A stretch of 64,000 nt of DNA, taken from IMG/VR virus record IMGVR_UViG_3300042892_005961, positions 62,001-126,000 of that record. One strand, 5' to 3'. The translations under genes were made by a program, and so were the position numbers. Of the stretch, positions 12,320-48,805 are shown piece by piece. Below the pieces are notes generated by a model, which saw only the letters and a program-made list of their open reading frames with translations, made no database searches and was not told where the DNA came from. The stretch's first letter is position 1; the number at the start of each line of letters is the position of its first letter.

Positions 12320-13442
12320 TTAATTTTCTTTCTCTCCACGGATCCACAACAATACTACCTTCAGGAAATATTGTTTCATTAAAAATACCTCTATGTCCTA
12401 ATAAATAAACCGCCGGTTCTTCAATCTTATCAAAATCAACATTTTCTTTGTAAGTAAAGTTAACATAATAACCAACTAGTACTGAATATGAACCTTCCGT
12501 AAATTCCACACCTGGTTTATAACTTTTACCCATAATAATAATTGGTAAATTGTGTTGTCTTGCTTGTCTAACTAATTTATCGGCTAAGTTTTTCGCTTGA
12601 ACCTCTCTTGTTTTCATTATTGAATCAAATAAATCATATCCCAATCCAAATCTTTGTGAAAGATATCTTAATGCGATATTATCTCTTGGGTGACACGAAC
12701 CTCCGTCACCCATACCCGCTTTCATATATGCGGGACCTGTGATTCTATTGGTACTTCTTTCTAATGCTCCCGTTACTACATCTGTATTCATACTACCGTT
12801 TTTCTCGGCGATGTCTTGAATCATGTTAACCAAAGTTAATTTTGCTGATATAAACGTATTGTAAAATATTTTTATACCCTCCGCTTCATCCCAATTACCA
12901 ATTTCATATCTTGTGCCGTGTGTTACTATTGTATCATAAAAATCTTTCAATATTTTTGCATCCGTTGTTGTTGATCCGTCCTCAGTTCCAATTATAATCA
13001 TTTCAGGATTGACCATATCATGTTTAACGGTACCCATAGCAATTAGATATGGATTATAAATAAATCTATAATTTCTAACTAATGAATAAAATTGACTTCT
13101 TGTTGTACCGGGTAGTACTGTTGATATTAGTACCACCAATTGTGATTTATTTGTATACTCATTTAACTCATTTAAAATACCTTGTACAATTGTATAGTCA
13201 AAATCTTTTGGTGGTAATTGTGCCATTGGTTGACTACCATCATATGCTGGATCATGTGGTGTTGGTACCGCAATGAATATTATTTCTCTATCTTTACAAA
13301 CATCCTCTAAAGATGTTGTCATTGTAAATTTAGTATCGGTGACTAATTTTACATCATAACCTAACACATCGTGACCGGCTTCGTACATTACTTCAGCCGC
13401 ATCTTTACCTAATTTACCAATTCCAATAAATCCTACTTTCAT
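12267..13442 (-). CDS. ugd: UDP-glucose/GDP-mannose dehydrogenase family protein
   Basis: GFIGIGKLG, IAVPTP, STVLPGT, YNPYL, KIFYNTF, GDGGSCHPRD (catalytic Cys), GKSYKP. Confidence 0.85.
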   Translation of the reverse strand: MKVGFIGIGKLGKDAAEVMYEAGHDVLGYDVKLVTDTKFTMTTSLEDVCKDREIIFIAVPTPHDPAYDGSQPMAQLPPKDFDYTIVQGILNELNEYTNKSQLVVLISTVLPGTTRSQFYSLVRNYRFIYNPYLIAMGTVKHDMVNPEMIIIGTEDGSTTTDAKILKDFYDTIVTHGTRYEIGNWDEAEGIKIFYNTFISAKLTLVNMIQDIAEKNGSMNTDVVTGALERSTNRITGPAYMKAGMGDGGSCHPRDNIALRYLSQRFGLGYDLFDSIMKTREVQAKNLADKLVRQARQHNLPIIIMGKSYKPGVEFTEGSYSVLVGYYVNFTYKENVDFDKIEEPAVYLLGHRGIFNETIFPEGSIVVDPWRERKLNDTIYYGGKKQDIKSLL

Positions 13443-13448
13443 ATTATA

Positions 13449-14723
13449 TTATATTTTATTTAAGTCAGACCATATCTCGTCTAATACATCGGATATGTCT
13501 TTGTTTATTTCCATTTCACTATATTTTAAATCATATAGTTCTCTATACTTCAATTGATTGTGTTGACATACTTCTTTCATTTCATTTCTCATCTGATGAA
13601 GTTGTTCCGTTGACAATTCACTCAATCTTTTTAATTCTTTTGATATCATTATAGATCGTTGATCTCTATTTGGTTCATTATCGTAATTCTCATCAAACCA
13701 TTTGTCAAATGTTCTATAACCCTTCTCTTTAAGATATTTCAATGAGTATTGATTACCGTACAATAAGAATGGATGTCCGACCATTAATGGTTTCCAAATT
13801 TTCTCTGAGAAGAATAAAGTGCCGTCGTCAACCAATGATTCTGTAACCATTGAAAGGAATGTTCTCTCATAATCTTCTTTAGTTATATTAACCGCCAAAT
13901 TATAATTCAAATCGTATCTATGATCAATAATAAATGGTGCGTTATCTTTTAAATAATTTAAATGATCTTGATTTAAATAATCGGGTATAGGTTCTCTTAA
14001 TTTATTTAAACTTACTAATCCCTTATCAAAAACACCGTATTCTAATAAATGTGTTAAGAACACTAATCTCTGTGGTCTTGGATTTCTATTATATGATAAA
14101 AATAAATATCTATTATCAATTGGTTTAAAATCAACTGGTGTCATTTCATCATACCTATTCCAAGGTTCAAACGAATGTGTCGGTCTTGCTTGAAAACCTA
14201 ATTCTCTTTCTTTAACAAGTTGGTCAGATATTAGATTACCACAGATTAAATAAACTGAATTAATGGGGAAATCCATATCTTTTCTCCATTTTTCCAAAAT
14301 TTCTAAATCATGATTACCATATGATCCCGAATATCCTTCAAATAAGTAAATTAAGACTATTTTAGACTTTCCATTTCTCACATCATCAATGTATTGTTTT
14401 GACATACACTTAAATCCTATGTCAAAGTTTTCCACAAAAAAATGTAGGTTCCAAACATTAATAATGTATATATGTGGTTGATTATCAATGTTTTCTATTG
14501 GTGTGTATTCAATATCTTTAGAGTAATTAGGGGTTATGATTCCCTTGAATCTTCCGTTATCAAAAAGATCACCGTCTTCACTAAATATATTCCACATACC
14601 CCACATTAAAGGTCTGTGCAATTCCTTTAATTCATTAAGATACCACGTCTTTGATGAACCGTTAGGTCTATAGTAATTAATAATACTATCCCATTGTTCT
14701 AAACTGCAAATGATTTTACCCAT
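13449..14723 (-). CDS. GT10-like glycosyltransferase paralog
   Basis: FLSYNRNPRPQR, SMVTES...FFSEKIWKPL...HPF, DENYD. Confidence 0.55.
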   Translation of the reverse strand: MGKIICSLEQWDSIINYYRPNGSSKTWYLNELKELHRPLMWGMWNIFSEDGDLFDNGRFKGIITPNYSKDIEYTPIENIDNQPHIYIINVWNLHFFVENFDIGFKCMSKQYIDDVRNGKSKIVLIYLFEGYSGSYGNHDLEILEKWRKDMDFPINSVYLICGNLISDQLVKERELGFQARPTHSFEPWNRYDEMTPVDFKPIDNRYLFLSYNRNPRPQRLVFLTHLLEYGVFDKGLVSLNKLREPIPDYLNQDHLNYLKDNAPFIIDHRYDLNYNLAVNITKEDYERTFLSMVTESLVDDGTLFFSEKIWKPLMVGHPFLLYGNQYSLKYLKEKGYRTFDKWFDENYDNEPNRDQRSIMISKELKRLSELSTEQLHQMRNEMKEVCQHNQLKYRELYDLKYSEMEINKDISDVLDEIWSDLNKI

Positions 14724-14764
14724 AAATTATTATGAAATATAAATAAAAAAAACCATAATAACAA

Positions 14765-14795
14765 TTTGTAATTCATTATTTTTTTTGTATATTTT
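14765..14795 (+). promoter_or_regulatory. Candidate Bacteroidota-type promoter TTTG-N19-TATATTTT for the + strand cassette
   Basis: Lies in the divergent gap 14724-14799; matches the TTTG(-33)/TAnnTTTG(-7) consensus with one mismatch and ends 4 nt before ATG 14800. Confidence 0.5.
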
Positions 14796-14799
14796 ATAT

Positions 14800-15771
14800 A
14801 TGAAAATATTAATAACCGGAGGGGCCGGATACCTTGGATCGGTAATTACGGGAAAAATGTTGTCTGAAGGACACGAAGTTGTTGTTCTTGACAAGTTAAT
14901 CTTTAATCAGGTTTCTCTTTTATCATACACCTCAAATCCTAAATTTAAATTTATACATGGTGATGTTCGTAACGTAACCTTATTAGAAAGACTTTGTAAT
15001 GAGTGTGATGTTATAATTCCATTGGCCGCAATTGTAGGGTTTCCAGCATGTGCGTCAGAACCTGAATTGGCGAAAGAAATTAATTTTCAACAAATAGTTA
15101 ATATTGTCAAATTTACAAATGGTAAAAATAAAAAGATATTATATCCAAATACAAATAGTGGGTATGGATTAGGGACGGGACAATTGGAATGTACTGAGGA
15201 ATCTCCATTAACTCCAATATCTGTTTATGGACAAACTAAATGTGAAGCCGAAAACTTTTTAAAAAATTGTACCGATGCGATAATTTTTAGATTAGCAACT
15301 GTATTTGGTGTTTCTCCTCGTATGAGAACTGATTTACTAGTGAACGATTTTACATACAAAGCAATAACTGACAAATATATTGTTGTATTTGAAAAGAATT
15401 TTAAACGTAATTTCATTCACATTCAAGATGTTGCATCGGTTTTCTTATTTATGTTAGAAAATTATGATCTACATAAGGGTGAAATTTTTAATGTCGGTTT
15501 AAGTAATGCTAATTTATCTAAACAAGAATTACTTGAGAGAATACAAACTCATGTAAAGAACTTTGCGGTTTCATATAATGATTATTATGAAGATCCAGAT
15601 AAAAGAGATTATATTGTATCAAATGATAAAATAGAATCAATCGGATGGTTTCCTAAATGGACTATCGATATGGGTATTGAAGAATTAATAATGGCTTACC
15701 AAATGATAGTACCAAGAATGGGTGCTGAATTTAGAAATGGATTTCCATTAGGATACGCAAATCAAACATAA
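14800..15771 (+). CDS. NAD-dependent epimerase/dehydratase (extended SDR)
   Basis: MKILITGGAGYLGS, PLAAIVG, YGQTK (YxxxK), RLATVFG, RNFIHIQDVA. ATG 14800 is preferred over the TTG start at 14785. Confidence 0.9.
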   Translation: MKILITGGAGYLGSVITGKMLSEGHEVVVLDKLIFNQVSLLSYTSNPKFKFIHGDVRNVTLLERLCNECDVIIPLAAIVGFPACASEPELAKEINFQQIVNIVKFTNGKNKKILYPNTNSGYGLGTGQLECTEESPLTPISVYGQTKCEAENFLKNCTDAIIFRLATVFGVSPRMRTDLLVNDFTYKAITDKYIVVFEKNFKRNFIHIQDVASVFLFMLENYDLHKGEIFNVGLSNANLSKQELLERIQTHVKNFAVSYNDYYEDPDKRDYIVSNDKIESIGWFPKWTIDMGIEELIMAYQMIVPRMGAEFRNGFPLGYANQT

Positions 15772-15772
15772 T

Positions 15773-16588
15773 ATGGATTTATCAAAATATAAATATTTTT
15801 ATGTAAATGGGTCATCATACTGTGAAGGTGGTGGTTTAGAGGAACCTGAAATAAGAGATGATAGTGTTATTCCTGAATATCAAAAACAATTTGGGGTTAC
15901 TTGGTCAGATAGATCTGAAGTTAATTTTGGTAAACGATTATCTGATATAATTGGAATACCCTGTATTAATGAGGCTAAGTGCGGTGGTGGGATGGAAAGG
16001 TTGGTTAGAAAGACATATGATTTTATTGATACTCATTGGTACGAAAAAGATGAGTTTTTTTTAATATTGGAAAAACCTGATTCAACAAGATTTGAATTTT
16101 ACTTTAACGAAATTAAAGATTATTATATTGCTAACTCCGTTTTTAAAAATGAAGACTATAACCTTGAATTTTCTTACGCTACAAGATCGTATAATAATAA
16201 ATTACTAAATGAATTTGATAAAAAATATCAAGATAAATTCAAACAATACTTTTTAGATTTTTTTAATTTAGAAGAAAACATTAAAAAGAATGAACTACAA
16301 TTTGTTGGTTTATACTCTTTTTGTAAATTGAATAATATTAAGGTATTTGTTATGTCTCCTAATAACATATATTTTAAAAGATGTTTTAATAGTGAAGACA
16401 TAATTTCATTCACAAAATATAATATTGGTGATGATATCGCTGGATGGTGTAAAAATAATAATTTATTAATTAAAGATGAAATTGGTAATGAGTTTAATGA
16501 TTTTCATCCTGGTTATTTCGGTCATTTAGAATATGCTAAGGAGCTTGCTAAATTTTTAGAAAAAAAAGAAAATAAAAAATTAATATGA
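15773..16588 (+). CDS. SGNH-like protein
   Basis: VNGSSYCEG, NEAKCGGG, DFHPGYFG. Confidence 0.55.
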   Translation: MDLSKYKYFYVNGSSYCEGGGLEEPEIRDDSVIPEYQKQFGVTWSDRSEVNFGKRLSDIIGIPCINEAKCGGGMERLVRKTYDFIDTHWYEKDEFFLILEKPDSTRFEFYFNEIKDYYIANSVFKNEDYNLEFSYATRSYNNKLLNEFDKKYQDKFKQYFLDFFNLEENIKKNELQFVGLYSFCKLNNIKVFVMSPNNIYFKRCFNSEDIISFTKYNIGDDIAGWCKNNNLLIKDEIGNEFNDFHPGYFGHLEYAKELAKFLEKKENKKLI

Positions 16589-17130
16589 GTAATAAATGGG
16601 ATGAGTTCATAGAAACTCCGTCAAAAAAATTCGGGTACCAAGTACCTATGTTTACACCTTCAATTTATAGAGAATATAGAGGTGAGATATTCACTACATT
16701 TCATAGTGAAGAACATCCTGTGATGAAACATATTCATTATGAGAAATCTGAAATTAGTATTCACGGTAGATTCTCAAAATCATACAAGGGAGTGTTAAGA
16801 GGTCTACATTACGATAATAAAACTTGGAAATTAGTACAAGCTGCAGTTGGTGATATATATTTAATAGTATTAGATATGAGACCAACGTCAGACACATTCG
16901 GTGAATGGGAATCCTTTATGATTACCGAGAAAGATAGAAATCAAGTATTGGTTCCGCCAGGTTTTGCGAACGGTCATTACGCGTTAACCGATTGTATGTT
17001 CCATTATAACCTATTTTATAAAGATGGTTATGTGGATGCAAATGAACAAGGTGTTGTTAAATGGAACGATCCTGAATATCAAATGGAATGGCCAACAAAT
17101 AATCCAATATTACAAAAAAGAGACAGATGA
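16585..17130 (+). CDS. rmlC: dTDP-4-dehydrorhamnose 3,5-epimerase family (RmlC-like cupin)
   Basis: EYRGEIF, SKSYKGVLRGLHY, KLVQ...G, DMRPTS, VPPGFANGH, WNDP...WP. Confidence 0.85.
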   Translation: MSNKWDEFIETPSKKFGYQVPMFTPSIYREYRGEIFTTFHSEEHPVMKHIHYEKSEISIHGRFSKSYKGVLRGLHYDNKTWKLVQAAVGDIYLIVLDMRPTSDTFGEWESFMITEKDRNQVLVPPGFANGHYALTDCMFHYNLFYKDGYVDANEQGVVKWNDPEYQMEWPTNNPILQKRDR

Positions 17131-17762
17131 TTAAAAATTTAAACGATGAATTACCAATTGTTAGAGACGCACAATATACAGTTGAGGATTTAATAAAATA
17201 TGAAAAAATGATTGCTGACCATTGGGAAGCTGGTAGAATAAAAGGACCAGTTCATCTTAGTGGTGGTAATGAATCGGAATTACTTGAAATTGGTAAAAGA
17301 ATTAAAACCACTGATTGGGTATTCTCAACATGGAGGTCACATTATCACGCATTAATCAAAGGTGTGTCTCCCGTTTGGTTAGAACAAGAGATTCTTGAAG
17401 GTCGTTCTATAACTATTGTTAGTAAAGAAGATAGATTCTATTCATCTGCAATTGTTGGTGCAATCATACCAATTGCAACAGGTGTGGCATTAGCAAATAA
17501 AAGAGACGGTAAAGATGATAAAGTTTGGTGTTTTATTGGTGACATGGCATTTGAAACTGGTGGTTTTTATGAAATGCACAAATACGCTCAACGTTATGAT
17601 TTACCAATACGTTTTGTTGTTGAGGATAATGGTGTATCAACAAACACCCCTACAGAAGAAACGTGGAACGGAATAAAAAGAGATGTCCCAAGTGATGTTA
17701 TTTGGTATGAATATAAAAAAGAGTGGCCGCACTACGGAACAGGAAAATGGGTGATTTTTTAA
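17127..17762 (+). CDS. TPP-dependent dehydrogenase E1-alpha-like subunit (short)
   Basis: GPVHLSGGNE, STWRSHYH, IVGAIIPIATG, TPP-binding GDM...EDN motif. Only 211 aa. Confidence 0.85.
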   Translation: MIKNLNDELPIVRDAQYTVEDLIKYEKMIADHWEAGRIKGPVHLSGGNESELLEIGKRIKTTDWVFSTWRSHYHALIKGVSPVWLEQEILEGRSITIVSKEDRFYSSAIVGAIIPIATGVALANKRDGKDDKVWCFIGDMAFETGGFYEMHKYAQRYDLPIRFVVEDNGVSTNTPTEETWNGIKRDVPSDVIWYEYKKEWPHYGTGKWVIF

Positions 17763-18934
17763 ATATATTGGTGGGGGATTACGAAGATATTGATGAGAGA
17801 TATTATTATCAAATTAGAGAACCTAAAGAACGTAAATTTAGTAAAATAAAGAATGTTTTGGGATCTATTGGTATTAATAATGTCGTTGAATGTAATTCTA
17901 TTATAAATAATGATCAGAATTACTATTATTTTATTTATCAATTATCTGACTTGAGGTTTTTAGAACTGCCAACATTTTTAAAACCTGAATTTATTGAATT
18001 AATGAAAAACAATAAAAATTTAAATGTTGTCTTTTTAAATGAACATGAATCTGAATCAGAAGAAAATTATATTTTACTTAGTGAATCGGTAATAAAACAA
18101 GAATTAAATCCTAATCAATTTTATTTTATTAATAATAATTCTAATTTAGACTATTATAAATTAAAAAATAATGGTGTTAATGTTTATTCTTTAAGATTTC
18201 TACCTTCCTATTATTCAAAACACATTTTTAAAAATGATATTGATATTGTAACTGATAAAGAATTTTTATTTATGTGTCATAATAAAAGAATTAAACCTCA
18301 TAGATTTGGAATTCTTTTAGAAATGAAAAAATTAAATATTATTAACAATATCGATTGGTCTTTTCTTTTAAATGATGACCCAAATAGAGATTATTATCAG
18401 TTTTTTAAAAAATTATATAGTGACGATGAAATTACTTCTTTATTATCTCACATAGAATATTTTAATGAATTAGGTATCAAAAAAAGTAAATATGAAAATA
18501 ATCAATTAAATGATAATTTACAAAATGATTTTATTTATACCAAAACATTTGAAAATGCGTATATTAATATCGTAACTGAGACTTATTTTGAGGGTAACCG
18601 TGTTCATATTACTGAAAAGTCTTTTAAGCCGTTTAATTTTTATCAATTACCTATTTTTTTAACAACATATGGTCATGTTAAAAAATTAAAAGAAATATAT
18701 AAATTTGATATGTTTGATGACTTTATTGATCACTCATACGATAATGAAATTGATGATAAAAAAAGATTTAGACTTATTGTACGTGAAATTGAAAAATTAA
18801 ATGGTATGGATGTGAAAAATTTTTACAATAAGAATATTGACAGATTAATACAAAATAAAAAAATAATATCTGAGATATCTAATGATACTTGTGATATTGA
18901 ATACTTTAAAAAATTAACAAAGAGTAATGGATAA
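17747..18934 (+). CDS. GT10-like glycosyltransferase paralog
   Basis: FMCHNKRIKPHR, YINIVTET...HITEKSFKPF...LP, DHSYD. Start placed at MGDFLN by alignment with paralogs. Confidence 0.55.
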   Translation: MGDFLNILVGDYEDIDERYYYQIREPKERKFSKIKNVLGSIGINNVVECNSIINNDQNYYYFIYQLSDLRFLELPTFLKPEFIELMKNNKNLNVVFLNEHESESEENYILLSESVIKQELNPNQFYFINNNSNLDYYKLKNNGVNVYSLRFLPSYYSKHIFKNDIDIVTDKEFLFMCHNKRIKPHRFGILLEMKKLNIINNIDWSFLLNDDPNRDYYQFFKKLYSDDEITSLLSHIEYFNELGIKKSKYENNQLNDNLQNDFIYTKTFENAYINIVTETYFEGNRVHITEKSFKPFNFYQLPIFLTTYGHVKKLKEIYKFDMFDDFIDHSYDNEIDDKKRFRLIVREIEKLNGMDVKNFYNKNIDRLIQNKKIISEISNDTCDIEYFKKLTKSNG

Positions 18935-20165
18935 AATTTTAAACACGGTATATGATTCTTGGGATGGTGATGACATGTTACCCAATTTATGTAATACCAC
19001 TAATAGTAATTCATTTAGAACAGTAAAAGGATTATTTAATTTCTATGAAGTTATTGATCAAGTAAGAAATTGTAAGATTGAAGACGTATACAATAACCCA
19101 AATGAGAAATATTTTTATTTTATTAATCCAGTTGGTAATTCCTTATATTTGTTTCACCAATTTAAAAAAATACCTTTACCTGAAAACGTTGTTGAATGTT
19201 TTATGAAATGTGAGAATTTTAACATAGTAATTATAAATGAACACGAGCCAGAAACTAAAGAATATATAAAATTTATTGATGACGATTGTTTAGATAAGGG
19301 TTATGACAGAAAACGGTTTTATATATTAAATAATAACTCTAGGTTAAGTCAACATAAGCAATCTTTAAATTCTGAACTTAATGTTTATTCAACGGGATTT
19401 TTATTAAAATTTATATCTAAACATTTATGTAAATATGACTCTAAATTTATACCGGAGAAAAACTCTGAATTTTTTATGTGTCATAATCGTAGTCCAAAAA
19501 TACATCGTTATGTTTTTATTTGTTTATTATTAAAAAATGGTTTAATTGACGATGTTGATTGGTCTATGGTCATGGGTTGGTATCGTAAAACGAATAGATA
19601 CGGTGGATTCTATGAAGATTTATTAACAAAATATGAGACGCATTTTGTTTATCAAGAACAAATTGCTTATTTGGAAAATGTTGAGGTTAAACGAAGTAAA
19701 TTTGAGGTAGACAAAGATTGGTTTACGTCTGAGGAAATTTCACCTTCTTTTGAGTGGAATCAGATATATGAATTAAAAACGTATGAAAGTTCATACGTTA
19801 ATATTGTTACAGAATCAAATTTCTTGTTTAATGAAATTCACATTACCGAAAAGACACTAAAACCATTTTATTTCTATCAATTTCCTATTTTCTTATCCTC
19901 AATGAACCACATTAAATACATTAAAGAAATGTATGGTTTTGATATGTTTGACGACATACTTGATCATTCTTATGATAATGAGCCTGATAATAAAAAAAGA
20001 TTATTTATGGTATATGATGAAGTAAAAAGACTTAGTAAAAATAAAGACAAACTTATTGAGTTTTATAAAAATAACGAATCGAGGTTTGAAAAAAATAAAC
20101 AAATTGTTATTAATATTTCTAAATTAAATAAAGACTTAGAATATTTTAATAACATAAACAAATAA
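18927..20165 (+). CDS. GT10-like glycosyltransferase paralog
   Basis: FMCHNRSPKIHR, YVNIVTES...HITEKTLKPF...FP, DHSYDNEP. Confidence 0.55.
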   Translation: MDKILNTVYDSWDGDDMLPNLCNTTNSNSFRTVKGLFNFYEVIDQVRNCKIEDVYNNPNEKYFYFINPVGNSLYLFHQFKKIPLPENVVECFMKCENFNIVIINEHEPETKEYIKFIDDDCLDKGYDRKRFYILNNNSRLSQHKQSLNSELNVYSTGFLLKFISKHLCKYDSKFIPEKNSEFFMCHNRSPKIHRYVFICLLLKNGLIDDVDWSMVMGWYRKTNRYGGFYEDLLTKYETHFVYQEQIAYLENVEVKRSKFEVDKDWFTSEEISPSFEWNQIYELKTYESSYVNIVTESNFLFNEIHITEKTLKPFYFYQFPIFLSSMNHIKYIKEMYGFDMFDDILDHSYDNEPDNKKRLFMVYDEVKRLSKNKDKLIEFYKNNESRFEKNKQIVINISKLNKDLEYFNNINK

Positions 20166-20171
20166 TATATT

Positions 20172-21815
20172 ATGAAAAAAGTATTAATAACGGGGTGTTC
20201 TGGTTTGGTTGGAACCTACTTAATAAAAAAATTTTTAAGGGAACGATACCATGTGATTGGTGTTGACATAAATGAACCCAACATTTCAACCAAAAGATTT
20301 TCATTTGAAAAAATGGATCTTACTAAAGAAGATAATATTAGTAATATATTAAATAAATATTCTCCTGATGTTGTTATTAATGCATTTGGAATAAAGGGTT
20401 CTCCTATTAGAGCTAAAACTAAACCTGTTGATTTCTTATACCCGTCTTTTAAAATTAATACGGAATTGATTCATCAATGTTATAAAAGAGATATATGGTT
20501 AGTTTTTATGAGTTCTGTTGGTGTGTATGCTCCCGCTGAAAAATTTGTAGAGGATGATGTATGGAAAACATTACCATCTGAACATGATTGGTTTCCATCT
20601 TGGTCTAAAAGGACTGGTGAATTGTTATTAGAAGCGTATAAAGTTCAATATGGGTATGATAAATGGTCAATTATAAGACCTGCCAATATATTTGGTGAAT
20701 ATGATGACTTTAGTGGTAATGGTACCGTAATATCAACTACAATTAAGAAAATATGGGAATCTGAAGGGACAATGGAATGTTGGGGAGATGGTAGTCCAAC
20801 TAGAGACTTTGTATTTGGTGATGACGTTGCAGATGCAATATATAAAATGTATGAAAATAAAATTAATGATATTGTAAATTTTGGTTCAGGAGAAGAAATT
20901 ACTATTAAATCGATGATTGATGATTTAGTTAAAATTAGTGGTAAAGATATTACCATCACGTGGGATTCAACTAAACCTAATGGTGATCTTAGAAGACAAA
21001 TGGATGTGACTAAACAAAAATCATATGATTTATTACCTTCTAAACCATTTGTAGATGCTCTTAAAAAAACATACTATTATTACATTTCACAATTCCCAAA
21101 TCCAAATTTAGATTTCAATGTAAGAGATTTTTTATCAAAAGGTTACTATGTTGGTAATAGTGGTAAATTATTTAAAGATGTTAATGATTTTAATCGTAAT
21201 GTTGATTTAGTAATTTCTTCATCTAATGATAAAAGTAATTATTTGTATAGATACGAATATGGTGTTGCTAGTGGTGATGATAACTATAAACGTAGTATTA
21301 CCTTAGATGAAGTTCCGGCCAGAGATGAATTTATTAAAAATAACGACGCATTTGTGATTCAAAAGTGGTGGGAAACTCATAACATATCTAAAGATATGAT
21401 GGACGCTAAAATGTATTTTAGAACCTTAATTGATTCATACATACCAAACATTTATCCTGATTTAAAAGATAATATACTACATCAAGATAATTTTACATTA
21501 TACGAGAATGGTGATTTCATTACTCCTCATCAGGATGGTTATAATGCTGCAAGATATTGTGTTGTTTTAATTTACCTTTCAGATGAAAAAGACTATATTG
21601 ATGGTGGTGGTAAATTAATCATTGATGATGGTGATACTAAAGAAGAAGTATTACCGGTAAAATATAATTTTAGTATATTAGATTTTAGTGAAAACAATGT
21701 TAATCATGCGGTTGAGGTAGTTAAAAATAATTTTAGAAGATTCACTTACATTGATTTTATTTATAATGAAAGTGAATTTAAAACATGGCAAAAAAAAGAA
21801 CAAAATAAAATATGA
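20172..21815 (+). CDS. GDP-fucose-synthase-like SDR fused to a C-terminal 2OG-Fe(II) oxygenase
   Basis: N-half: ITGCSGLVG, SWSKR, RPANIFG, WGDGSPTRDF. C-half: PHQDG (HxD), LIYL, GGGKL, NHAVE, RF. Confidence 0.75.
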   Translation: MKKVLITGCSGLVGTYLIKKFLRERYHVIGVDINEPNISTKRFSFEKMDLTKEDNISNILNKYSPDVVINAFGIKGSPIRAKTKPVDFLYPSFKINTELIHQCYKRDIWLVFMSSVGVYAPAEKFVEDDVWKTLPSEHDWFPSWSKRTGELLLEAYKVQYGYDKWSIIRPANIFGEYDDFSGNGTVISTTIKKIWESEGTMECWGDGSPTRDFVFGDDVADAIYKMYENKINDIVNFGSGEEITIKSMIDDLVKISGKDITITWDSTKPNGDLRRQMDVTKQKSYDLLPSKPFVDALKKTYYYYISQFPNPNLDFNVRDFLSKGYYVGNSGKLFKDVNDFNRNVDLVISSSNDKSNYLYRYEYGVASGDDNYKRSITLDEVPARDEFIKNNDAFVIQKWWETHNISKDMMDAKMYFRTLIDSYIPNIYPDLKDNILHQDNFTLYENGDFITPHQDGYNAARYCVVLIYLSDEKDYIDGGGKLIIDDGDTKEEVLPVKYNFSILDFSENNVNHAVEVVKNNFRRFTYIDFIYNESEFKTWQKKEQNKI

Positions 21816-22792
21816 TGAATAAAAATTCCAAAATATTAATCACTGGTGGTTCGGGATTAGTAGGACAAAATTTAACCGAAAGATTACTTAGAGAAGGATA
21901 TACCAATTTAAGAGTAAACCTACATAAAAGAGGTGTTAGAACTACCCACGATGGTGTTGATTACACATACCATGATTTACAAACTTATGAAGGTTGTTTA
22001 ATGGCAACAAAAGAAGTGGATGTGGTATTTCATGCTGCTGCTTCAACATCTAATGCTGTGGACACTGTAGTTGATCCATTAGCTCATGTTACACCAAATG
22101 TTGCAATGAATAACTTCTTAATTGATTCTAGTTGGAGAAATAAGGTTCAACATTACATCTTCTTATCATCTAATACAGTTTATCCACCAAAAGGAGATGA
22201 ACCCGTTGTTGAGACTGATTTCTTATTTAATGAACCATATCCCGTTTACTTCCCTGTGGGTTGGATGAAGAGATATGCTGAGATTCAATGTGAATTGTAT
22301 GGAAAGTATTTACCTGTTAAAATGAAATGTACTGTCGTTAGACCAGCTAATTTGTTTGGTCCTCATGATAAGTATGATTTCAATAAGTGTCACGTTACTC
22401 CAGCAACCATTCGTAAAGTTGCTGACAGAATGAACCCAATTCCAGTGTGGGGTGATGGTAGTGAATTGAGAGATCTATTGTACATTGAAGATTTTGTTGA
22501 GGCATTACAAGTTATTATGGAAAATGAAACTGAAATGTTTGAAGTATATAATGTTGGTTCTAATAAAGTTTATTCAGTATTGGAAGTATTAGATATAATG
22601 AAAACAATTGCGGAACATGATGCACCAATAGAATTTATTAGTGGAAAACCTTCTATGATACCTACACGTAAAATTGATTCTAATAAAATTAAAGAAAAAT
22701 TAGGTTGGGAATCAAAAACATCTTTGTCGGTAGGTTTGAAGAAAGGTTACGATTGGTATAATGAACATAAAGAAGAATTTAATAAAATTTAA
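21812..22792 (+). CDS. GDP-L-fucose-synthase-like epimerase/reductase
   Basis: ITGGSGLVG, HAAA, GWMKR, RPANLFGPHD, WGDGSELRDLLY. Confidence 0.85.
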   Translation: MMNKNSKILITGGSGLVGQNLTERLLREGYTNLRVNLHKRGVRTTHDGVDYTYHDLQTYEGCLMATKEVDVVFHAAASTSNAVDTVVDPLAHVTPNVAMNNFLIDSSWRNKVQHYIFLSSNTVYPPKGDEPVVETDFLFNEPYPVYFPVGWMKRYAEIQCELYGKYLPVKMKCTVVRPANLFGPHDKYDFNKCHVTPATIRKVADRMNPIPVWGDGSELRDLLYIEDFVEALQVIMENETEMFEVYNVGSNKVYSVLEVLDIMKTIAEHDAPIEFISGKPSMIPTRKIDSNKIKEKLGWESKTSLSVGLKKGYDWYNEHKEEFNKI

Positions 22793-22800
22793 TAAATAAA

Positions 22801-23634
22801 ATGAAAGGATTACTATTTGGGGGTTGTTCATTTACATGGGGTCAGGGGTTATATTTCTATTCGGATTTACCTGGTTTAGTTTACCCCCCAAATGAAACAA
22901 CATATGAAAGACATCATTTAACTGACGCACATTTAAAATTTAAAGATACAATTCGTCATCCAAGATTGATTGCAAATCATTTTAATACATTTGAAGTTGT
23001 AAAAAATCTTAATGGTGGTTCTGAAGATGAAACGTTTGATTTTTTTAACATTATTTTTGACCGTAACACAAAAGGTCGAGAACATTTATCATATGAAAAA
23101 TATTCATATGAAGATATTGATTATATTATAATTCAATTAAGTCAAGTTTCGAGAAATAAATTTTGGTTTACTTTGAATGGTAAAAGACAATTCTGTGGTG
23201 CTTGGGTAGGTGGTGATAACAAGATAAATTTTGGATACAATATTGAAAATTTATTTATATGGATGGAACAAAATAATATGTCTGTTGATGAATGGTTTGA
23301 ATTACATAAAGATTTACAAGTAAAACGTTTAAAAAAAGAATTGATATTTTATGAAGAAAAGGGAATAAAACCAATTATATTTGCTTGGACGGACGAATTA
23401 CTTAGTAGAATTAAAAAAGATGATTATCTTTATAGTAAATTTATTAACATTGAATATAATGGGGAACCGTTTGAGACAATAGAAAATTTACAGAGGAGAC
23501 ATGGTAATATGGAAATCAAAAGTGACTTTAATAACTTCACAAATACCCCTCCGATGGATCACCACCCGTCAAAAGAGTGTCATCAAATATTTGCACAAAA
23601 CATAATAAAAAGAATAGAAAAAGATTTAATATGA
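22801..23634 (+). CDS. SGNH-like protein
   Basis: FGGCSFTWG, NLNGGS, DHHPSKEC. Confidence 0.55.
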   Translation: MKGLLFGGCSFTWGQGLYFYSDLPGLVYPPNETTYERHHLTDAHLKFKDTIRHPRLIANHFNTFEVVKNLNGGSEDETFDFFNIIFDRNTKGREHLSYEKYSYEDIDYIIIQLSQVSRNKFWFTLNGKRQFCGAWVGGDNKINFGYNIENLFIWMEQNNMSVDEWFELHKDLQVKRLKKELIFYEEKGIKPIIFAWTDELLSRIKKDDYLYSKFINIEYNGEPFETIENLQRRHGNMEIKSDFNNFTNTPPMDHHPSKECHQIFAQNIIKRIEKDLI

Positions 23635-24179
23635 GTTCACCACAATACACCCCGTACAAGGACGCACTAACTAATTCAATGACTTACCTTGGTCAACAGG
23701 AAGATACCGTTTTTATAGGTCAACAAGTCCTTTGGCACGGTAATCCTATGAGCACCACAATAGGTGAAGTTCCTAAAGATAAACTAATTGAACTTCCCGT
23801 TATGGAAGAATCTCAAATGGGTATGTCATTAGGAATGGCAATGGCGGGTAAGTTTGTTGTTACATTCTACCCTCGTTGGGATTTTGTGATATGTGCAACA
23901 AATCAATTGGTAAATCATGTTGATAAAATTGGGTTAATGAGTCAAGGTAAATGGAAACCTAATATGATTGTTCGTTTAGGTAAAGGTTCTGATAAACCAT
24001 TAGATCCGGGTCACCAACATAGAGGTAACTATTTTGAAGAATTTAAATCTATGTGTCCTAATACTAAATTTTGGGATTTAAAGAATTATTCAGAGATTGA
24101 ATCAATTTATAAAAACGCATATACTGAAGGTGGTATTCATGTTATAGTTGAATATCCTGAGTTATATTACGAATCATAA
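23631..24179 (+). CDS. TPP-dependent E1-beta/transketolase pyrimidine-binding subunit (short)
   Basis: VFIGQ, ELPVMEESQMGMSLGMA, NQLVNH, GHQH. Start at the ATGA overlap at 23631. Lacks the C-terminal transketolase domain. Confidence 0.8.
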   Translation: MSSPQYTPYKDALTNSMTYLGQQEDTVFIGQQVLWHGNPMSTTIGEVPKDKLIELPVMEESQMGMSLGMAMAGKFVVTFYPRWDFVICATNQLVNHVDKIGLMSQGKWKPNMIVRLGKGSDKPLDPGHQHRGNYFEEFKSMCPNTKFWDLKNYSEIESIYKNAYTEGGIHVIVEYPELYYES

Positions 24180-24204
24180 AAAAAGGGACTTAATGTCCCT
24201 TTTT
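24178..24204. terminator. Bidirectional intrinsic terminator
   Basis: AAAAAAA-GGGAC-TTAAT-GTCCC-TTTTT between convergent genes. Confidence 0.8.
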
Positions 24205-24206
24205 AT

Positions 24207-24638
24207 TTATCCTTCCATTTCTTCATCTTTCTTTGGCCAACTAACTTCCCAATCTTTAAAATCTGCAGCAATACAATCAATTTTATAATCTTTTCTACCA
24301 CCAACAACTTCTTGTATTTTATTCTTTGCAGTATTCCTAATACCATTTAATCCGTGTGTCAATGCCAACATACTTGGTCCTTCTTTTCCACTTCTTACAT
24401 TAGATTCATTATGCCAAATGTGTAAATTCATCTGTGCACATACAATAACAGCTCTTAACATTTCACCAGTAATTACAACATCTTTTTCACTTAATATAAG
24501 TTGTATATCATGTGTAATGTCTGCAATTTCTTGAGCATACTCTTCTTTGTGTTCGGTTATAAAAACCTCTTTTAATTGTACAATTGATAATCTATCAAGT
24601 AATTCCGATAATGTCGGTAAAAATCTTCTTTGTTTCAT
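24207..24638 (-). CDS. Helical hypothetical protein (DUF6165-like N-terminus)
   Basis: PTLSELLDRLSIVQLKE N-terminal helix; a family often found in glycan clusters (from memory). Confidence 0.5.
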   Translation of the reverse strand: MKQRRFLPTLSELLDRLSIVQLKEVFITEHKEEYAQEIADITHDIQLILSEKDVVITGEMLRAVIVCAQMNLHIWHNESNVRSGKEGPSMLALTHGLNGIRNTAKNKIQEVVGGRKDYKIDCIAADFKDWEVSWPKKDEEMEG

Positions 24639-25936
24639 TATATTAATGATTTATATTTTAGTTTATTTGTTTCTTCATTACAATATCTTTTCATTTCTAA
24701 ATACGCATCAGGAAATCTAAATAATTTCTCAATCAATGCATTATAATTATATTCAATCGTATCTTCCATTGATTTAAACCACCCAATTTTATCTTCTATA
24801 TTAACCACCTTTCTAATTGATTCAATTAGATATTGAAGTCTCTCATGTGTTGGTAATGTGTCATATCCTTCATCTATAAAACCATCAAAAGTCTTATATC
24901 CAATTTTTCTCATCATATTAAGACTATCTTTATTACCCATTATCATATATGGGTGTCTACAAGCTAATACTTTAAATGTTTTTTCACTTAAGAACATTGT
25001 TTGATCACTATCACCACAATGTGCTTCACTAATGACCGTAACAAATGTATCCAAACAAATATCATCATTAAAACGATTAATGTAGAAACTATCATCTAAC
25101 TCATTATTAGGTTTTTCATAAACTAATAAAGGTAGTCCTTTAGTAATTTCATTCAATAATTCTTCTTCCATATGTTTCCCTTCCCATTGATACCAATGTT
25201 TTGGAAAATCATTCATACTAACTAATCCGTCTTTTAATAAACCAGAATGATAAAGATAATTGTAGAACCAAACTCTCTGTGGTCTAATTCTTTTATTTAA
25301 ACACGCAAACGATTTTAATTTTTCAGGATGTGTAAGTTTATAATTAATATGATCTTGAAATGTTGGTAACGGATGTGCTTTCTCACCTTTAGATCGACCA
25401 TAACAAGTCATACCCATATCTAATTCAAAATGTGGGTATGGTATAACCTTTAATTTTTCAATTATATTATTATCTTCACACCATTTATCATAAACCACAT
25501 CTGCAATCATATTACCTGTTACATATATGATACGTTTTGGTGATACATCCCACTCTTGACATTGTTTATGAAAATAATCCCACAGCCATGATGTTTGATA
25601 ACCTTCTAAACTTTGATCTAACATTAAGAATGCTTTTTTATCTCTTAAATCTTTTAAGTATTTTTCATTAAGATGAAAAAAGAAACTTTTGACTCTTGGG
25701 TTATAACCTGTCCAATCATCGGGACTATGATTTACCGAAACTGGTATAATATATCCGTTTTTTTCGTCACTAGCGGGATAATATTGTAATTCACTATGTT
25801 TGTCATGTGCTTGAACGTATATCTGTGTTGCAGTTAATAATGCTGAAATACCAAACCTACCAATACCAGATGGATTAATATCATTACATGATGTAAAATT
25901 TGCTAACTTTTCTGTGTCCTCAAATAAGAAATCCAT
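24638..25936 (-). CDS. GT10-like glycosyltransferase paralog
   Basis: FACLNKRIRPQR, TVISEA...FLSEKTFKVL...HPY, DEGYD. Confidence 0.55.
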   Translation of the reverse strand: MDFLFEDTEKLANFTSCNDINPSGIGRFGISALLTATQIYVQAHDKHSELQYYPASDEKNGYIIPVSVNHSPDDWTGYNPRVKSFFFHLNEKYLKDLRDKKAFLMLDQSLEGYQTSWLWDYFHKQCQEWDVSPKRIIYVTGNMIADVVYDKWCEDNNIIEKLKVIPYPHFELDMGMTCYGRSKGEKAHPLPTFQDHINYKLTHPEKLKSFACLNKRIRPQRVWFYNYLYHSGLLKDGLVSMNDFPKHWYQWEGKHMEEELLNEITKGLPLLVYEKPNNELDDSFYINRFNDDICLDTFVTVISEAHCGDSDQTMFLSEKTFKVLACRHPYMIMGNKDSLNMMRKIGYKTFDGFIDEGYDTLPTHERLQYLIESIRKVVNIEDKIGWFKSMEDTIEYNYNALIEKLFRFPDAYLEMKRYCNEETNKLKYKSLI

Positions 25937-48786: not shown

Positions 48787-48805
48787 TTTATATCTATCTT
48801 TATTT

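What the first reader, a model, noticed from the sequence alone, without database searches (positions are those of the whole stretch)
14800..24179. Inverted cassette that looks like a branched-chain sugar pathway with a split, minimised TPP enzyme
Seen: the only + strand block (own promoter, bidirectional terminator) holds an SDR, RmlC, a 211-aa E1-alpha-like gene, a 182-aa E1-beta-like gene 5.9 kb away lacking its C-terminal domain, two fucose-synthase-like reductases, two GTs and two SGNH proteins. No E2/E3 genes are present. Established: TPP enzymes such as YerE add C2 branches to NDP-4-keto-deoxysugars (yersiniose). Inference: it makes an unusual branched NDP-sugar and its transferases, as an exchangeable module for glycan variation.
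Basis: partly seen in the sequence, partly recalled or inferred. Interest (0 to 1): 0.62.

Follow-up and report, generated by a model that had tools for sequence, protein, structure and literature searches.

The report
Phage sugar cassette with minimal thiamine enzyme
A freshwater jumbo phage carries a ten-gene sugar-nucleotide operon built around a stripped-down two-piece thiamine enzyme that most likely adds a carbon branch to a GDP-4-keto sugar; the same uncharacterised core module is found in dozens of related phage contigs, in cyanophages and in a few bacterial genome bins.

Summary
Window 14785-24179 is the only + strand gene block: ten tightly packed genes ending at a 10-bp-stem hairpin between convergent stop codons.

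The inventory is right, with corrections.
- The first SDR closely matches PDB 6VO6. From memory this is Cj1427, the Campylobacter GDP-heptose C4-dehydrogenase.
- The "RmlC" scores best against GDP-4-keto-heptose 3/3,5-epimerases.
- The two unknowns of about 400 aa are GT-B glycosyltransferases. The two of about 275 aa are SGNH-type.

The 211-aa (ThDP-binding) and 182-aa (pyrimidine-binding) proteins are halves of one enzyme.
- They are fused into 402-aa proteins in cyanophages S-SM2 and P-TIM68 (PHROG 34187).
- Their genes are adjacent in 10 related phage loci and in bacterial MAG contigs.
- Beta follows alpha on the same strand in all 63 phage loci that reach far enough.
- The 5.9-kb gap is a variable gene slot between them (18 bp to 9.3 kb).

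Best reading (confidence about 0.55): a minimal E1-derived carboligase of the AviB1/AviB2 and KbDH type acts on a GDP-4-keto sugar. No biochemistry exists. Promoter claims are unverifiable. I rate it a new variant of a known kind.

The parts
14724..14799 (.). Divergent AT-rich spacer between the - strand GT-B paralog gene and ORF1. It holds one TATAAATA (14738-14745, + strand).
   Evidence: sequence; promoter-like motifs occur at chance frequency, so promoter function is not shown.
14800..15771 (+). ORF1, 323 aa from ATG (328 aa from TTG 14785). Extended SDR, probably a GDP-sugar C4-dehydrogenase of the Cj1427 type.
   Evidence: PDB 6vo6_A: E 2.7e-102, 346 bits, over 309 residues, shared YPNTNSGYG active-site stretch. 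The next best PDB hit scores 84 bits. Pfam Epimerase. 6VO6 = Cj1427 is from my own memory, not from a tool.
15773..16588 (+). ORF2, 271 aa. Divergent SGNH-like protein; a lineage-specific insertion between ORF1 and ORF3.
   Evidence: Weak DUF6071 hit. Aligns with the ORF9 family, keeping the Ser, GG and D-x-H positions. Present only in L004 and L072 of 71 loci. A contig joint 15768->16581 lacking it appears in 3 lake runs.
16585..17130 (+). ORF3, 181 aa. Cupin NDP-4-keto-sugar 3- or 3,5-epimerase of the GDP-4-keto-heptose epimerase type.
   Evidence: Best PDB hits are C. jejuni GDP-D-glycero-4-keto-D-lyxo-heptose 3-/3,5-epimerases (8dcl, 7m14, 8dco; about 120 bits), against about 82 bits for dTDP RmlC. 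Pfam PF00908.
17127..17762 (+). ORF4 'alpha', 211 aa. The ThDP (PP) domain half of an E1-alpha-like enzyme. Invariant G138-D139-M140 ... E166-D167-N168 cofactor/Mg motif.
   Evidence: E1_dh 62 bits on profile positions 8-172/300 and PDH_E1_alph_y 94 bits. Human PDH E1 alpha is the best PDB hit. Conservation. Aligns to residues 1-199 of the 402-aa S-SM2 fusion protein and to positions 2-198 of PHROG 34187.
17747..18934 (+). ORF5, 395 aa from ATG (403 aa from GTG 17723). GT-B glycosyltransferase paralog.
   Evidence: 37% identical to ORF6 and 36% to the - strand gene 11006-12319. Member of alignment A1.
18927..20165 (+). ORF6, 412 aa. GT-B fold glycosyltransferase; no Pfam family; carries an HITEK motif.
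   Evidence: AlphaFold2 pLDDT 90.1. Foldseek hits are all GT-B glycosyltransferases. VIA Z 9-11.6 to GT-B enzymes, including GT10 fucosyltransferases (Z 9.0-9.9; H. pylori 5zoi has the highest identity at 13%). Atlas lead to PF00852 at 0.79 only.
20172..21815 (+). ORF7, 547 aa. N-terminal GDP-fucose-synthase-like SDR fused to a C-terminal 2OG-Fe(II) oxygenase domain (about 420-547).
   Evidence: In many relatives the two parts are separate genes.
21812..22792 (+). ORF8, 326 aa. GDP-mannose-3,5-epimerase / GDP-fucose-synthase-like SDR (reductase or epimerase-reductase).
   Evidence: PDB 2c59 107 bits and 1bsv 105 bits. NCBIfam GDPFucSynFcl 140 bits, below its cut-off.
22801..23634 (+). ORF9, 277 aa. 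SGNH/GDSL-fold carbohydrate esterase or O-acyltransferase-like protein.
   Evidence: AlphaFold2 pLDDT 91.8. Foldseek matches CE2 acetyl-xylan esterases at E 1.5e-5, plus GDSL lipases and PatB. Invariant S10, G72, G73, H255. Atlas neighbours carry DUF6071 / Lipase_GDSL.
23631..24179 (+). ORF10 'beta', 182 aa. The pyrimidine-binding (Pyr) domain half of an E1-beta-like enzyme, with invariant cofactor-activating Glu59 (P-V-M-E-E). No Transketolase_C domain.
   Evidence: Transket_pyr positions 5-167/174 and PDH E1 beta models. PDB E1 beta chains. Conservation. Aligns to residues 231-398 of the S-SM2 fusion and to positions 237-401 of PHROG 34187. It is the only Transket_pyr domain in the record.
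24180..24204 (.). Palindromic hairpin: 10-bp stem, 5-nt loop, T-runs on both strands, between convergent stop codons. Bidirectional terminator-like.
24207..24638 (-). 143-aa conserved protein of unknown function that travels with the alpha/beta module in relatives, on either strand.
   Evidence: 66-98% identical copies lie next to the module in most phage loci. No Pfam or PHROG hit.
11006..14723 (-). Left flank: GT-B paralog (11006-12319), UDP-glucose/GDP-mannose dehydrogenase-family gene (12267-13442), GT-B paralog (13449-14723).
24638..25936 (-). Right flank: fifth paralog of the same GT-B family (432 aa).
   Evidence: 24% identity to 13449-14723. Row of alignment A1.

Best explanation
The block is one operon for remodelling a host-supplied GDP-manno-type sugar (GDP-heptose or GDP-mannose) and transferring the product.

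Core pathway, four genes:
1. ORF1, a Cj1427-type NAD enzyme, oxidises C4 to give a GDP-4-keto sugar that keeps its C6 oxygen.
2. ORF3 epimerises C3 and/or C5.
3. The alpha (PP domain) and beta (Pyr domain) proteins assemble into a minimal E1-derived ThDP enzyme. It has lost the parts that serve E2/lipoamide. It decarboxylates a 2-oxo acid, most likely pyruvate, and adds the resulting acyl-anion equivalent to the C4 carbonyl. The product is a 4-C-acetyl (tertiary alcohol) branched GDP-sugar, as proposed for AviB1/AviB2 and Pau11/Pau12 and shown in vitro on sugar analogues for KbDH alpha/beta.

Accessory genes fill the variable slot between alpha and beta. They then tailor the product (two fucose-synthase-like SDRs, a 2OG-Fe(II) oxygenase, two SGNH acyl-esterase/transferase-like proteins) and transfer it (two GT-B glycosyltransferases). 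The acceptor is unknown: virion fibres or the host surface.

Shown: gene content, domain truncation, cofactor motifs, the fusion, co-occurrence and synteny. Inferred: every catalytic step, the donor acid, the nucleotide and the acceptor.
For: Alpha and beta are halves of one enzyme:
- They align end to end on the 402-aa cyanophage S-SM2 protein: alpha on residues 1-199 (42% identity), beta on 231-398 (33%). They also align end to end on PHROG 34187.
- In 63 of 71 related phage loci beta follows alpha on the same strand. The other 8 run out of sequence first.
- The two genes are 18-22 bp apart in 8 loci (165 bp in 2 more) and 13-53 bp apart in MAG contigs binned to CPR bacteria and Rhabdochlamydiaceae.

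The enzyme looks catalytically competent and free-standing:
- The G-D-M ... E-D-N motif and Glu59 are invariant.
- The C-terminal half of E1 alpha and the Transketolase_C domain of E1 beta are absent.
- No E2 is found in the record.

It is coupled to a 4-keto sugar:
- ORF1 scores 346 bits against 6VO6.
- ORF3 scores best against GDP-4-keto-heptose epimerases.
- Homologues of ORF1, ORF3, alpha and beta stay together in phages and in MAG contigs.
- Parcubacteria contig L088 adds GMD, a GHMP kinase, a nucleotidyltransferase and a split transketolase. The cyanophage fusions sit in heptose-type clusters.
- Ten phage loci have alpha and beta less than 200 bp apart; at least eight of them read ORF1-ORF3-alpha-beta with no cassette homologue of the reductases nearby. 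Something other than a C4-reductase must therefore consume the keto intermediate.

Precedent:
- E1 alpha/beta-like pairs install C2 branches on keto sugars from pyruvate. Pau11 inactivation abolishes paulomycin production. AviB1/B2 act together with the non-haem iron enzyme AviO2 (PMC4425429, PMC4753412).
- KbDH alpha/beta was tested in vitro, and about 120 gene clusters carry such a pair (PMC12247030).
Against: - No biochemical, structural or expression data exist for this family. No RNA run holds the stretch.
- The complex prediction could not be run.
- The pair is far shorter (211 + 182 aa) than the characterised AviB/Pau proteins (325 + 345 aa). Its membership of that clade was not tested by phylogeny.
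- The identity of 6VO6 as Cj1427 rests on my memory.
- No genes for making GDP-heptose were found in the 211-kb record, which is only 63% complete. The substrate is therefore open.
- The window's own cassette holds two possible C4-reductases. An ordinary oxidise-epimerise-reduce route could run in parallel, with the ThDP enzyme doing something else.
Confidence: 0.55

Rival explanations
1. Same enzyme architecture and same keto-sugar acceptor, but a different donor or branch. The pair would work like the proposed split-gene transketolases of miharamycin and amipurimycin (hydroxyacetyl transfer). Alternatively it would use another 2-oxo acid such as hydroxypyruvate, 2-oxobutyrate or 2-oxoglutarate, giving a branch other than acetyl.
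For: Alpha also scores on DXP_synthase_N and transketolase models, and DXS chains appear among the PDB hits. The cyanophage fusions are annotated 'transketolase central region'. Split transketolases have been proposed to branch keto sugars (PMC12247030). Cj1427-type enzymes handle 2-oxoglutarate (PMC10680097).
Against: The best scores by a wide margin are PDH E1 alpha and beta: 94 bits on TIGR03182 against 32 bits on a transketolase model, and 61 bits on E1 against 27 bits on DXS. According to the review, the E1-type sugar-branching enzymes known so far use pyruvate only (PMC12247030).
Confidence: 0.17
2. The ThDP enzyme does not branch C4. It would elongate or rearrange the sugar chain instead, for example by acyloin condensation with a sugar aldehyde to give a higher-carbon sugar. 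Or it would act on a non-sugar 2-oxo acid that supplies a decoration. Meanwhile ORF1, ORF3 and ORF8 would form an ordinary oxidise-epimerise-reduce route to a GDP-L-sugar, as in C. jejuni.
For: The window holds all three C. jejuni-type steps: dehydrogenase, epimerase and fucose-synthase-like reductase. A 2OG oxygenase, radical SAM enzymes and a carbamoyltransferase nearby show that other decorations are made.
Against: The loci where alpha and beta are adjacent show no homologue of the cassette's reductases nearby, yet keep alpha and beta. Alpha and beta are the most conserved and most constant members of the module.
Confidence: 0.15
3. The pair is a conventional pyruvate/acetoin dehydrogenase E1 (an auxiliary metabolic gene) that works with the host's E2 and E3.
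For: The best family matches are PDH E1 alpha and beta. Some source annotations call the homologues 'pyruvate dehydrogenase E1 component alpha subunit'.
Against: - All scores lie far below the curated cut-offs (94 against 394 bits; 36 against 321 bits).
- The C-terminal half of E1 alpha and the whole C-terminal domain of E1 beta are missing.
- No E2 is found in the record.
- The genes sit inside sugar-nucleotide operons in phages and in MAG contigs binned to bacteria.
- The genes are fused in cyanophages.
Confidence: 0.03
4. The pair is a catalytically dead or purely structural remnant, and the cassette's products do not depend on it.
For: Extreme truncation relative to every characterised E1.
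Against: Cofactor-binding and activating residues are invariant across 30 sequences down to 56-61% identity. There are thousands of full-length homologues of constant length. Pairing is strict.
Confidence: 0.03

Closest known systems
E1 alpha/beta-type ('alphaKADH2') sugar C-branching ThDP enzymes: AviB1/AviB2 (avilamycin), Pau11/Pau12 (paulomycin), KbDH alpha/beta (kibdelomycin)
   Same: A two-gene PP-domain plus Pyr-domain enzyme of the E1 family, encoded without E2/E3 inside a sugar pathway that generates a keto sugar. A non-haem iron oxygenase and ketoreductase-type tailoring enzymes lie nearby, as with AviO2 and Pau7 (PMC4425429, PMC4753412, PMC12247030).
   Different: - About 60% of the size: 211 + 182 aa against 325 + 345 aa. 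It lacks the C-terminal half of E1 alpha and the Transketolase_C domain of E1 beta.
- Found in phages and in MAG contigs binned to CPR bacteria and Chlamydiae, not in actinomycete antibiotic clusters.
- Partnered with GDP-type (Cj1427/Cj1430-like) enzymes rather than TDP/UDP-deoxysugar enzymes.
- Exists as a single-chain fusion in cyanophages.
- Clade membership not tested.
Campylobacter jejuni capsular GDP-heptose modification pathway (Cj1427 C4-dehydrogenase, Cj1430 C3/C5-epimerase, Cj1428 C4-reductase)
   Same: ORF1 scores 346 bits against 6VO6. ORF3 scores best against the C. jejuni epimerase structures. ORF7-N and ORF8 are fucose-synthase-like, as the C4-reductases are (PMC10680097).
   Different: C. 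jejuni has no ThDP enzyme in this pathway; there the keto group is simply reduced. The phage record shows no GmhA, kinase or nucleotidyltransferase, so the substrate may be GDP-mannose rather than GDP-heptose.
YerE (yersiniose) and YerE-like decarboxylase-family ThDP lyases
   Same: The proposed reaction type: transfer of activated acetaldehyde from pyruvate to the C4 carbonyl of an NDP-4-keto sugar (PMC12247030).
   Different: YerE is a single-chain acetolactate-synthase-like flavoprotein acting on CDP-3,6-dideoxy-4-keto-glucose. The phage proteins belong to the E1/transketolase lineage (E1_dh, Transket_pyr).
Cyanophage 'transketolase central region-containing protein' (S-SM2 SSM2_198, P-TIM68 AIR93527; PHROG 34187, unknown function)
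   Same: Direct homologues, 42% and 33% identical to alpha and beta, inside phage sugar clusters.
   Different: They are single 381-402-aa fusions in heptose-type clusters that also carry an isomerase, a kinase and a nucleotidyltransferase. Here the enzyme is split into two genes that bracket a variable slot.

Membership tests
E1 alpha/beta-type sugar-branching ThDP enzymes (alphaKADH2: AviB1/B2, Pau11/12, KbDH) | Separate PP-domain subunit with a GDG-type ThDP/Mg motif and Pyr-domain subunit with the cofactor-activating Glu, both of the E1 lineage | tested here: met
   E1_dh and Transket_pyr hits, and PDH E1 alpha/beta as best NCBIfam and PDB matches. Invariant G-D-M...E-D-N and Glu59.
E1 alpha/beta-type sugar-branching ThDP enzymes (alphaKADH2: AviB1/B2, Pau11/12, KbDH) | Encoded without E2/E3, inside a sugar pathway that makes a keto sugar | tested here: met
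   No PF00198 in the record. ORF1 (C4-dehydrogenase-like) and ORF3 (4-keto-sugar epimerase-like) lie in the same operon and stay syntenic in phages and MAG contigs.
E1 alpha/beta-type sugar-branching ThDP enzymes (alphaKADH2: AviB1/B2, Pau11/12, KbDH) | Full-length E1 architecture (alpha about 325 aa; beta about 345 aa with C-terminal domain) | tested here: not met
   Alpha is 211 aa and covers E1_dh positions 8-172/300. Beta is 182 aa with no Transketolase_C. Pau11/12 sizes come from PMC4425429.
E1 alpha/beta-type sugar-branching ThDP enzymes (alphaKADH2: AviB1/B2, Pau11/12, KbDH) | Groups phylogenetically with the characterised branching enzymes rather than with metabolic E1s | not tested
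   No reference sequences of AviB, Pau or KbDH could be fetched with the tools.
E1 alpha/beta-type sugar-branching ThDP enzymes (alphaKADH2: AviB1/B2, Pau11/12, KbDH) | Pyruvate-dependent acetyl transfer to a keto sugar | not testable with these tools
   Needs an enzyme assay.
YerE-like decarboxylase-family lyases | Single chain with TPP_enzyme_N / M / C domains (acetolactate-synthase-like) | tested here: not met
   Only a partial TPP_enzyme_C hit (32 bits) over the shared cofactor motif. There are no TPP_enzyme_N or M hits. The best hits are E1_dh and Transket_pyr.
2-oxo-acid dehydrogenase complex E1 (PDH/BCKDH/AcoAB) | Scores above the curated family cut-offs, has the E1 beta C-terminal domain, and has an E2 partner | tested here: not met
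   94 bits against a 394-bit cut-off, and 36 against 321. No Transketolase_C. No E2 in the record.
Cj1427-type GDP-heptose C4-dehydrogenase (ORF1) | Close full-length similarity to the solved enzyme, including the active-site stretch that replaces the dehydratase Asp-Glu | tested here: met
   346 bits over 309 residues against 6vo6_A, with shared YPNTNSGYG and Y-x-x-x-K. That 6VO6 is Cj1427 comes from memory. Substrate and 2-oxoglutarate dependence were not tested.
GDP-4-keto-heptose C3/C5 epimerases (ORF3) | Scores higher against the GDP-heptose epimerase structures than against dTDP RmlC | tested here: met
   About 120 bits (8dcl, 7m14, 8dco, 8db5) against about 82 bits for RmlC entries.
GT10 alpha-1,3-fucosyltransferases (ORF5/ORF6) | Pfam PF00852 match, or clearly best structural match to GT10 | tested here: inconclusive
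   No Pfam hit. The fold is GT-B, with FUT9, H. pylori FucT and FUT11 at Z 9.4-9.9, but other GT-B families score Z 10-11.6. Atlas lead of 0.79 only.
SGNH/GDSL hydrolases (ORF9, ORF2) | SGNH fold with block I Ser, block II Gly and block V Asp/His | tested here: met
   Fold match to CE2 and GDSL enzymes. Invariant S10, G72/G73, H255. The Asp is spaced D-x-H rather than D-x-x-H. ORF2 is judged by alignment only; the profile comparison is circular because ORF2 is in A2.

The most novel reading that the evidence does not exclude
A previously unrecognised class of minimal ThDP carboligases: about 390 residues in total, PP and Pyr domains only, either split or fused. It derives from E1 and is dedicated to making C-branched GDP-heptose or GDP-hexose sugars. 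It is carried mainly by aquatic phages (freshwater jumbo phages, cyanomyoviruses) and sporadically by MAG contigs binned to CPR bacteria and Chlamydiae. In the jumbo-phage lineage the two subunit genes act as the fixed brackets of a hypervariable slot of tailoring and transferase genes, which diversifies a phage-made glycan.
Probability: 0.4. Interest if true: 0.75.

Novelty: new variant of a known kind. Interest (0 to 1): 0.62.

Why it matters
- ThDP enzymes that add carbon branches to keto sugars are sought as biocatalysts for chiral tertiary alcohols. Only a handful have been characterised, all of them large enzymes from bacterial pathways (PMC12247030). A naturally minimised two-domain version could define the smallest functional E1-type carboligase. 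It already exists as thousands of natural variants and as a ready-made single-chain fusion.
- It would extend the Cj1427-type 'oxidise C4 without dehydration' route beyond Campylobacter capsules to a new fate for the keto intermediate.
- Abundant lake and ocean phages would be shown to synthesise exotic branched sugars and to vary the tailoring genes in a defined slot. That bears on phage-host recognition and on virion or host-surface glycosylation.
- The proposal can be tested directly with four recombinant proteins.

Tried and rejected
There is therefore no structural test of the heteromer.
- Megablast of the cassette against cultured phages found nothing.
- Sigma-70-like promoters (80 found, 77.6 expected) and the T4 late motif TATAAATA (19 found, 17.9 expected) are at chance. 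I do not claim a promoter.
- No inverted repeats flank the cassette that could explain an inversion. The only long inverted matches are between paralogous glycosyltransferase genes.
- PMC7509852 and PMC7500870 (the Cj1427 structure and function papers) are not held, and a full-text search for '6VO6' gave nothing relevant. The 6VO6 = Cj1427 link therefore stays a recollection.
- No literature was found linking phage, heptose, 4-keto and thiamine.
- GDP-heptose precursor genes (SIS_2, NTP_transferase, GHMP kinase) and a Terminase_6N large terminase were not found in the 63%-complete record. Absence from the whole genome is not shown.
- NCLDV capsid was considered because of the eukaryote-like GT7 genes and collagen repeats. 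It was not found, but that search rang in no control genome either, so it says little. A tail sheath is present, so I treat the virus as a tailed phage.
- Phosphonopyruvate/sulfopyruvate-decarboxylase-type split enzymes were considered and rejected, because they belong to the TPP_enzyme_N/C lineage and not to E1/Transket_pyr.
- The profile comparison of ORF2 with A2 is circular and is not used as evidence.

Full report
**What the window is**

The window is bases 62001-126000 of a 211,168-bp IMG/VR virus record that CheckV rates 63% complete.
- The record encodes a tail sheath and a family-B DNA polymerase that is at most about 25% identical to any cultured phage.
- No NCLDV capsid was found, although that search rang in no control genome.
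- The nearest relative is a 335,630-bp contig (L004).
- Near-identical copies of the cassette occur in lake-water and freshwater metagenomes of 19 studies.

I therefore treat it as an uncultured freshwater jumbo tailed phage. Window positions 1-35,600 form a large glycan island. It holds 2OG oxygenases, a carbamoyltransferase, DUF5672, GDSL/DUF6071 proteins, a UDP-glucose-dehydrogenase-family gene, radical SAM proteins, two GT7+LamG proteins and a methyltransferase. After it come LamG proteins and collagen-repeat tail-fibre genes.

**Checking the observation**

- Ten + strand ORFs run from 14785/14800 to 24179 with overlaps or gaps of 9 nt or less. Every other + strand ORF of 100 aa or more lies inside a longer - strand ORF.
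- GC skew flips sign over exactly this block.
- A 10-bp-stem palindromic hairpin (24180-24204) fills the 27 bp between the convergent stops.
- The 'own promoter' is not verifiable. Sigma-70-like sites and TATAAATA occur at chance frequency. One TATAAATA sits in the divergent spacer (14738-14745).
- The gene inventory is correct, with one omission: ORF7 carries a C-terminal 2OG-Fe(II) oxygenase domain.

**The four genes without Pfam hits**

- ORF5 and ORF6 are paralogs of each other and of three - strand neighbours at 11006-12319, 13449-14723 and 24638-25936.
  - An AlphaFold2 model of ORF6 (pLDDT 90) is a GT-B glycosyltransferase.
  - All Foldseek hits are GT-B enzymes.
  - VIA-align gives Z 9-11.6, with GT10 fucosyltransferases among them but not clearly on top.
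- The ORF9 model (pLDDT 92) matches CE2 acetyl-xylan esterases and GDSL enzymes. Its Ser10, Gly72/73 and His255 are invariant.
- ORF2 aligns to the same catalytic positions and has a weak DUF6071 hit.

So 'two GTs and two SGNH proteins' is supported at fold level.

**The ThDP enzyme**

- Alpha (211 aa) covers only positions 8-172 of the 300-position E1_dh profile. Beta (182 aa from ATG 23631) is a bare Transket_pyr domain.
- Their best family and PDB matches are heterotetrameric PDH E1 alpha and beta, far below the curated cut-offs.
- Across 30 phage homologues down to 56-61% identity, the G-D-M ... E-D-N cofactor motif of alpha and the activating Glu59 of beta are invariant.
- The two proteins align end to end on the 402-aa 'transketolase central region-containing protein' of cyanophage S-SM2: alpha on residues 1-199 at 42% identity, beta on 231-398 at 33%. 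P-TIM68 carries an annotated 381-aa counterpart; only alpha was compared with it. Both halves also align end to end on PHROG 34187, a family of unknown function. This is a Rosetta-stone fusion.
- Beta is the only Transket_pyr domain in the record, and no E2 is present.

**Comparative genomics**

Alpha has 4,734 metagenomic homologues. The top 120 are all 209-211 aa long and 78-98% identical.

Of 71 IMG/VR loci, 63 have beta downstream on the same strand. The other 8 end before one is reached. The alpha-beta gap varies as follows:

| Gap | Loci | Content |
|---|---|---|
| 18-22 bp | 8 | none |
| 165 bp | 2 | none |
| about 1-2.7 kb | 12 | mostly a single SDR-sized or glycosyltransferase gene |
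| 4.7-9.3 kb | 41 | GT-B paralogs (single or fused to 840-900 aa), a fucose-synthase-like SDR, separate or fused 2OG oxygenase(s), a second SDR, one or two SGNH genes |

The constant core is ORF1, ORF3, alpha and beta, usually with the 143-aa protein encoded at 24207-24638.

Evidence that the module recombines and varies:
- Against its closest relative the window is 95-100% identical from 17.8 to 27.6 kb, but only 75-87% identical from 15.05 to 17.75 kb.
- In independent lake runs the exact sequence is present alongside many divergent contigs over ORF1 and ORF3. A variant lacking ORF2 (joint 15768->16581) is also present.
- The orientation of the module relative to its neighbours differs among relatives.
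- No flanking inverted repeats were found.

Prokaryotic genome bins were also scanned.
- Alpha and beta are adjacent genes next to ORF1-like, ORF3-like and fucose-synthase-like genes in MAG contigs binned to Parcubacteria/Paceibacteria and Rhabdochlamydiaceae.
- One Parcubacteria contig adds GDP-mannose 4,6-dehydratase, a NUDIX hydrolase, a GHMP kinase, a nucleotidyltransferase and a split transketolase.
- The distribution is sporadic. Only the query genome among 401 sampled genomes of that phylum has beta.
- Binning of these MAG contigs was not verified.

**Which sugar chemistry**

- ORF1 scores 346 bits over 309 residues against PDB 6VO6, and more than half of the aligned residues are identical. 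It shares the YPNTNSGYG stretch where 4,6-dehydratases have Asp-Glu.
- From memory, 6VO6 is Cj1427, the NAD-dependent GDP-D-glycero-D-manno-heptose C4-dehydrogenase that uses 2-oxoglutarate to reoxidise its bound NADH (function described in PMC10680097). I could not confirm the PDB code with the tools.
- ORF3 scores about 120 bits against C. jejuni GDP-4-keto-heptose 3- and 3,5-epimerases, against about 82 bits for RmlC.
- ORF8 and the N-terminus of ORF7 resemble GDP-mannose 3,5-epimerase and GDP-fucose synthase.
- The cyanophage fusions also sit in heptose-type clusters with an isomerase, a kinase and a nucleotidyltransferase.
- The record itself shows no such precursor genes, so the phage probably uses a host GDP-sugar.

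**Mechanism proposed**

ORF1 makes the GDP-4-keto sugar and ORF3 epimerises it. The alpha-beta enzyme decarboxylates pyruvate and adds the hydroxyethylidene-ThDP carbanion to C4, giving a 4-C-acetyl branched GDP-sugar. The slot genes then reduce, oxidise or acylate the product and transfer it.

Three points support this.
- The synteny is strict across lineages.
- The loci with alpha and beta adjacent show no homologue of the cassette's reductases nearby to consume the keto group.
- There is precedent in E1 alpha/beta-like pairs that branch keto sugars: AviB1/AviB2 with the non-haem iron AviO2, Pau11/Pau12 (325 and 345 aa), and KbDH alpha/beta in vitro (PMC4425429, PMC4753412, PMC12247030).

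Loss of the E1 alpha C-terminal half and of the E1 beta C-terminal domain fits an enzyme that no longer serves a lipoyl-E2. This last point is an inference from established E1 structure-function knowledge.

Every catalytic step is inferred. There is no assay, no structure and no RNA evidence.

**Comparison with known systems and verdict**

The module works like the alphaKADH2 sugar-branching enzymes. It fails their full-length architecture test, and its phylogenetic placement is untested. It is not a YerE-type enzyme and not a dehydrogenase-complex E1. Homologues have sat in cyanophage genomes for years under an uninformative name, and the PHROG family is 'unknown function'.

I rate it a new variant of a known kind. 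Interest is moderate to high, because it is abundant, minimal, directly testable and tied to phage glycan diversification. Confidence in the branching mechanism is about 0.55.

Noticed in passing
window 11006-12319(-), 13449-14723(-), 17747-18934(+), 18927-20165(+), 24638-25936(-): Five paralogs of one Pfam-less GT-B glycosyltransferase family lie within 15 kb, on both strands. In relatives two copies are fused into 840-900-aa proteins (e.g. L037:10618-13137, L013:10621-13311).
   Followed up: partly
window 24207-24638 (-): A 143-aa protein with no family hit is 66-98% identical across relatives. It always sits beside the alpha/beta module, on either strand, so it may be a functional partner.
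   Followed up: partly
window 30967-32412 and 32409-33824 (-): Two tandem proteins combine a eukaryote-type GT7 (beta-1,4-galactosyltransferase family) domain with a LamG/concanavalin-like domain. This is unusual for a tailed phage.
   Followed up: no
window 25939-27393 and 28161-30983 (-): Two large radical SAM proteins (484 and 940 aa) lie in the glycan island. In many relatives a homologue of the first lies between the ORF1 and ORF3 homologues, inside the module.
   Followed up: no
window 15773-16588 (ORF2): Presence/absence polymorphism. ORF2 is found in only 2 of 71 related loci. Contigs joining 15768 directly to 16581 occur in three independent lake runs.
   Followed up: yes
window 15050-17750 versus L004: Recombination mosaic. 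This tract is 75-87% identical to the closest relative, while the next 10 kb is 95-100% identical.
   Followed up: yes
window 45619-48786 (-) and composition 46001-50000: A 1055-aa ORF without any Pfam or PHROG hit lies between collagen-repeat fibre genes. GC skew is positive here although the gene is on the - strand, the opposite of the rest of the - strand genes.
   Followed up: no
G000:C1:43437-43616 (outside the window; L003): The only Gp23 (T4 major capsid) Pfam match in the record is a 60-residue stretch in a 98-aa open frame. No Terminase_6N large terminase was found in the 63%-complete record.
   Followed up: no
L081 (contig of single-cell genome AG-333-A04, Pelagibacteraceae) and L076 (Pelagibacterales MAG, GC 27%): Low-GC contigs with the alpha (L076) or alpha-beta (L081) genes are binned with SAR11-type genomes. 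L076 shows the phage-like gene order. They may be phage DNA and hint at a SAR11/LD12-type host for part of this phage group.
   Followed up: no
window 7263-8930 (-), 834-2032 (-), 8934-9683 (-): A NodU/CmcH-like carbamoyltransferase (PHROG 1601), two stand-alone 2OG-Fe(II) oxygenases and a DUF5672 protein extend the glycan-tailoring island well beyond the reported cassette.
   Followed up: no
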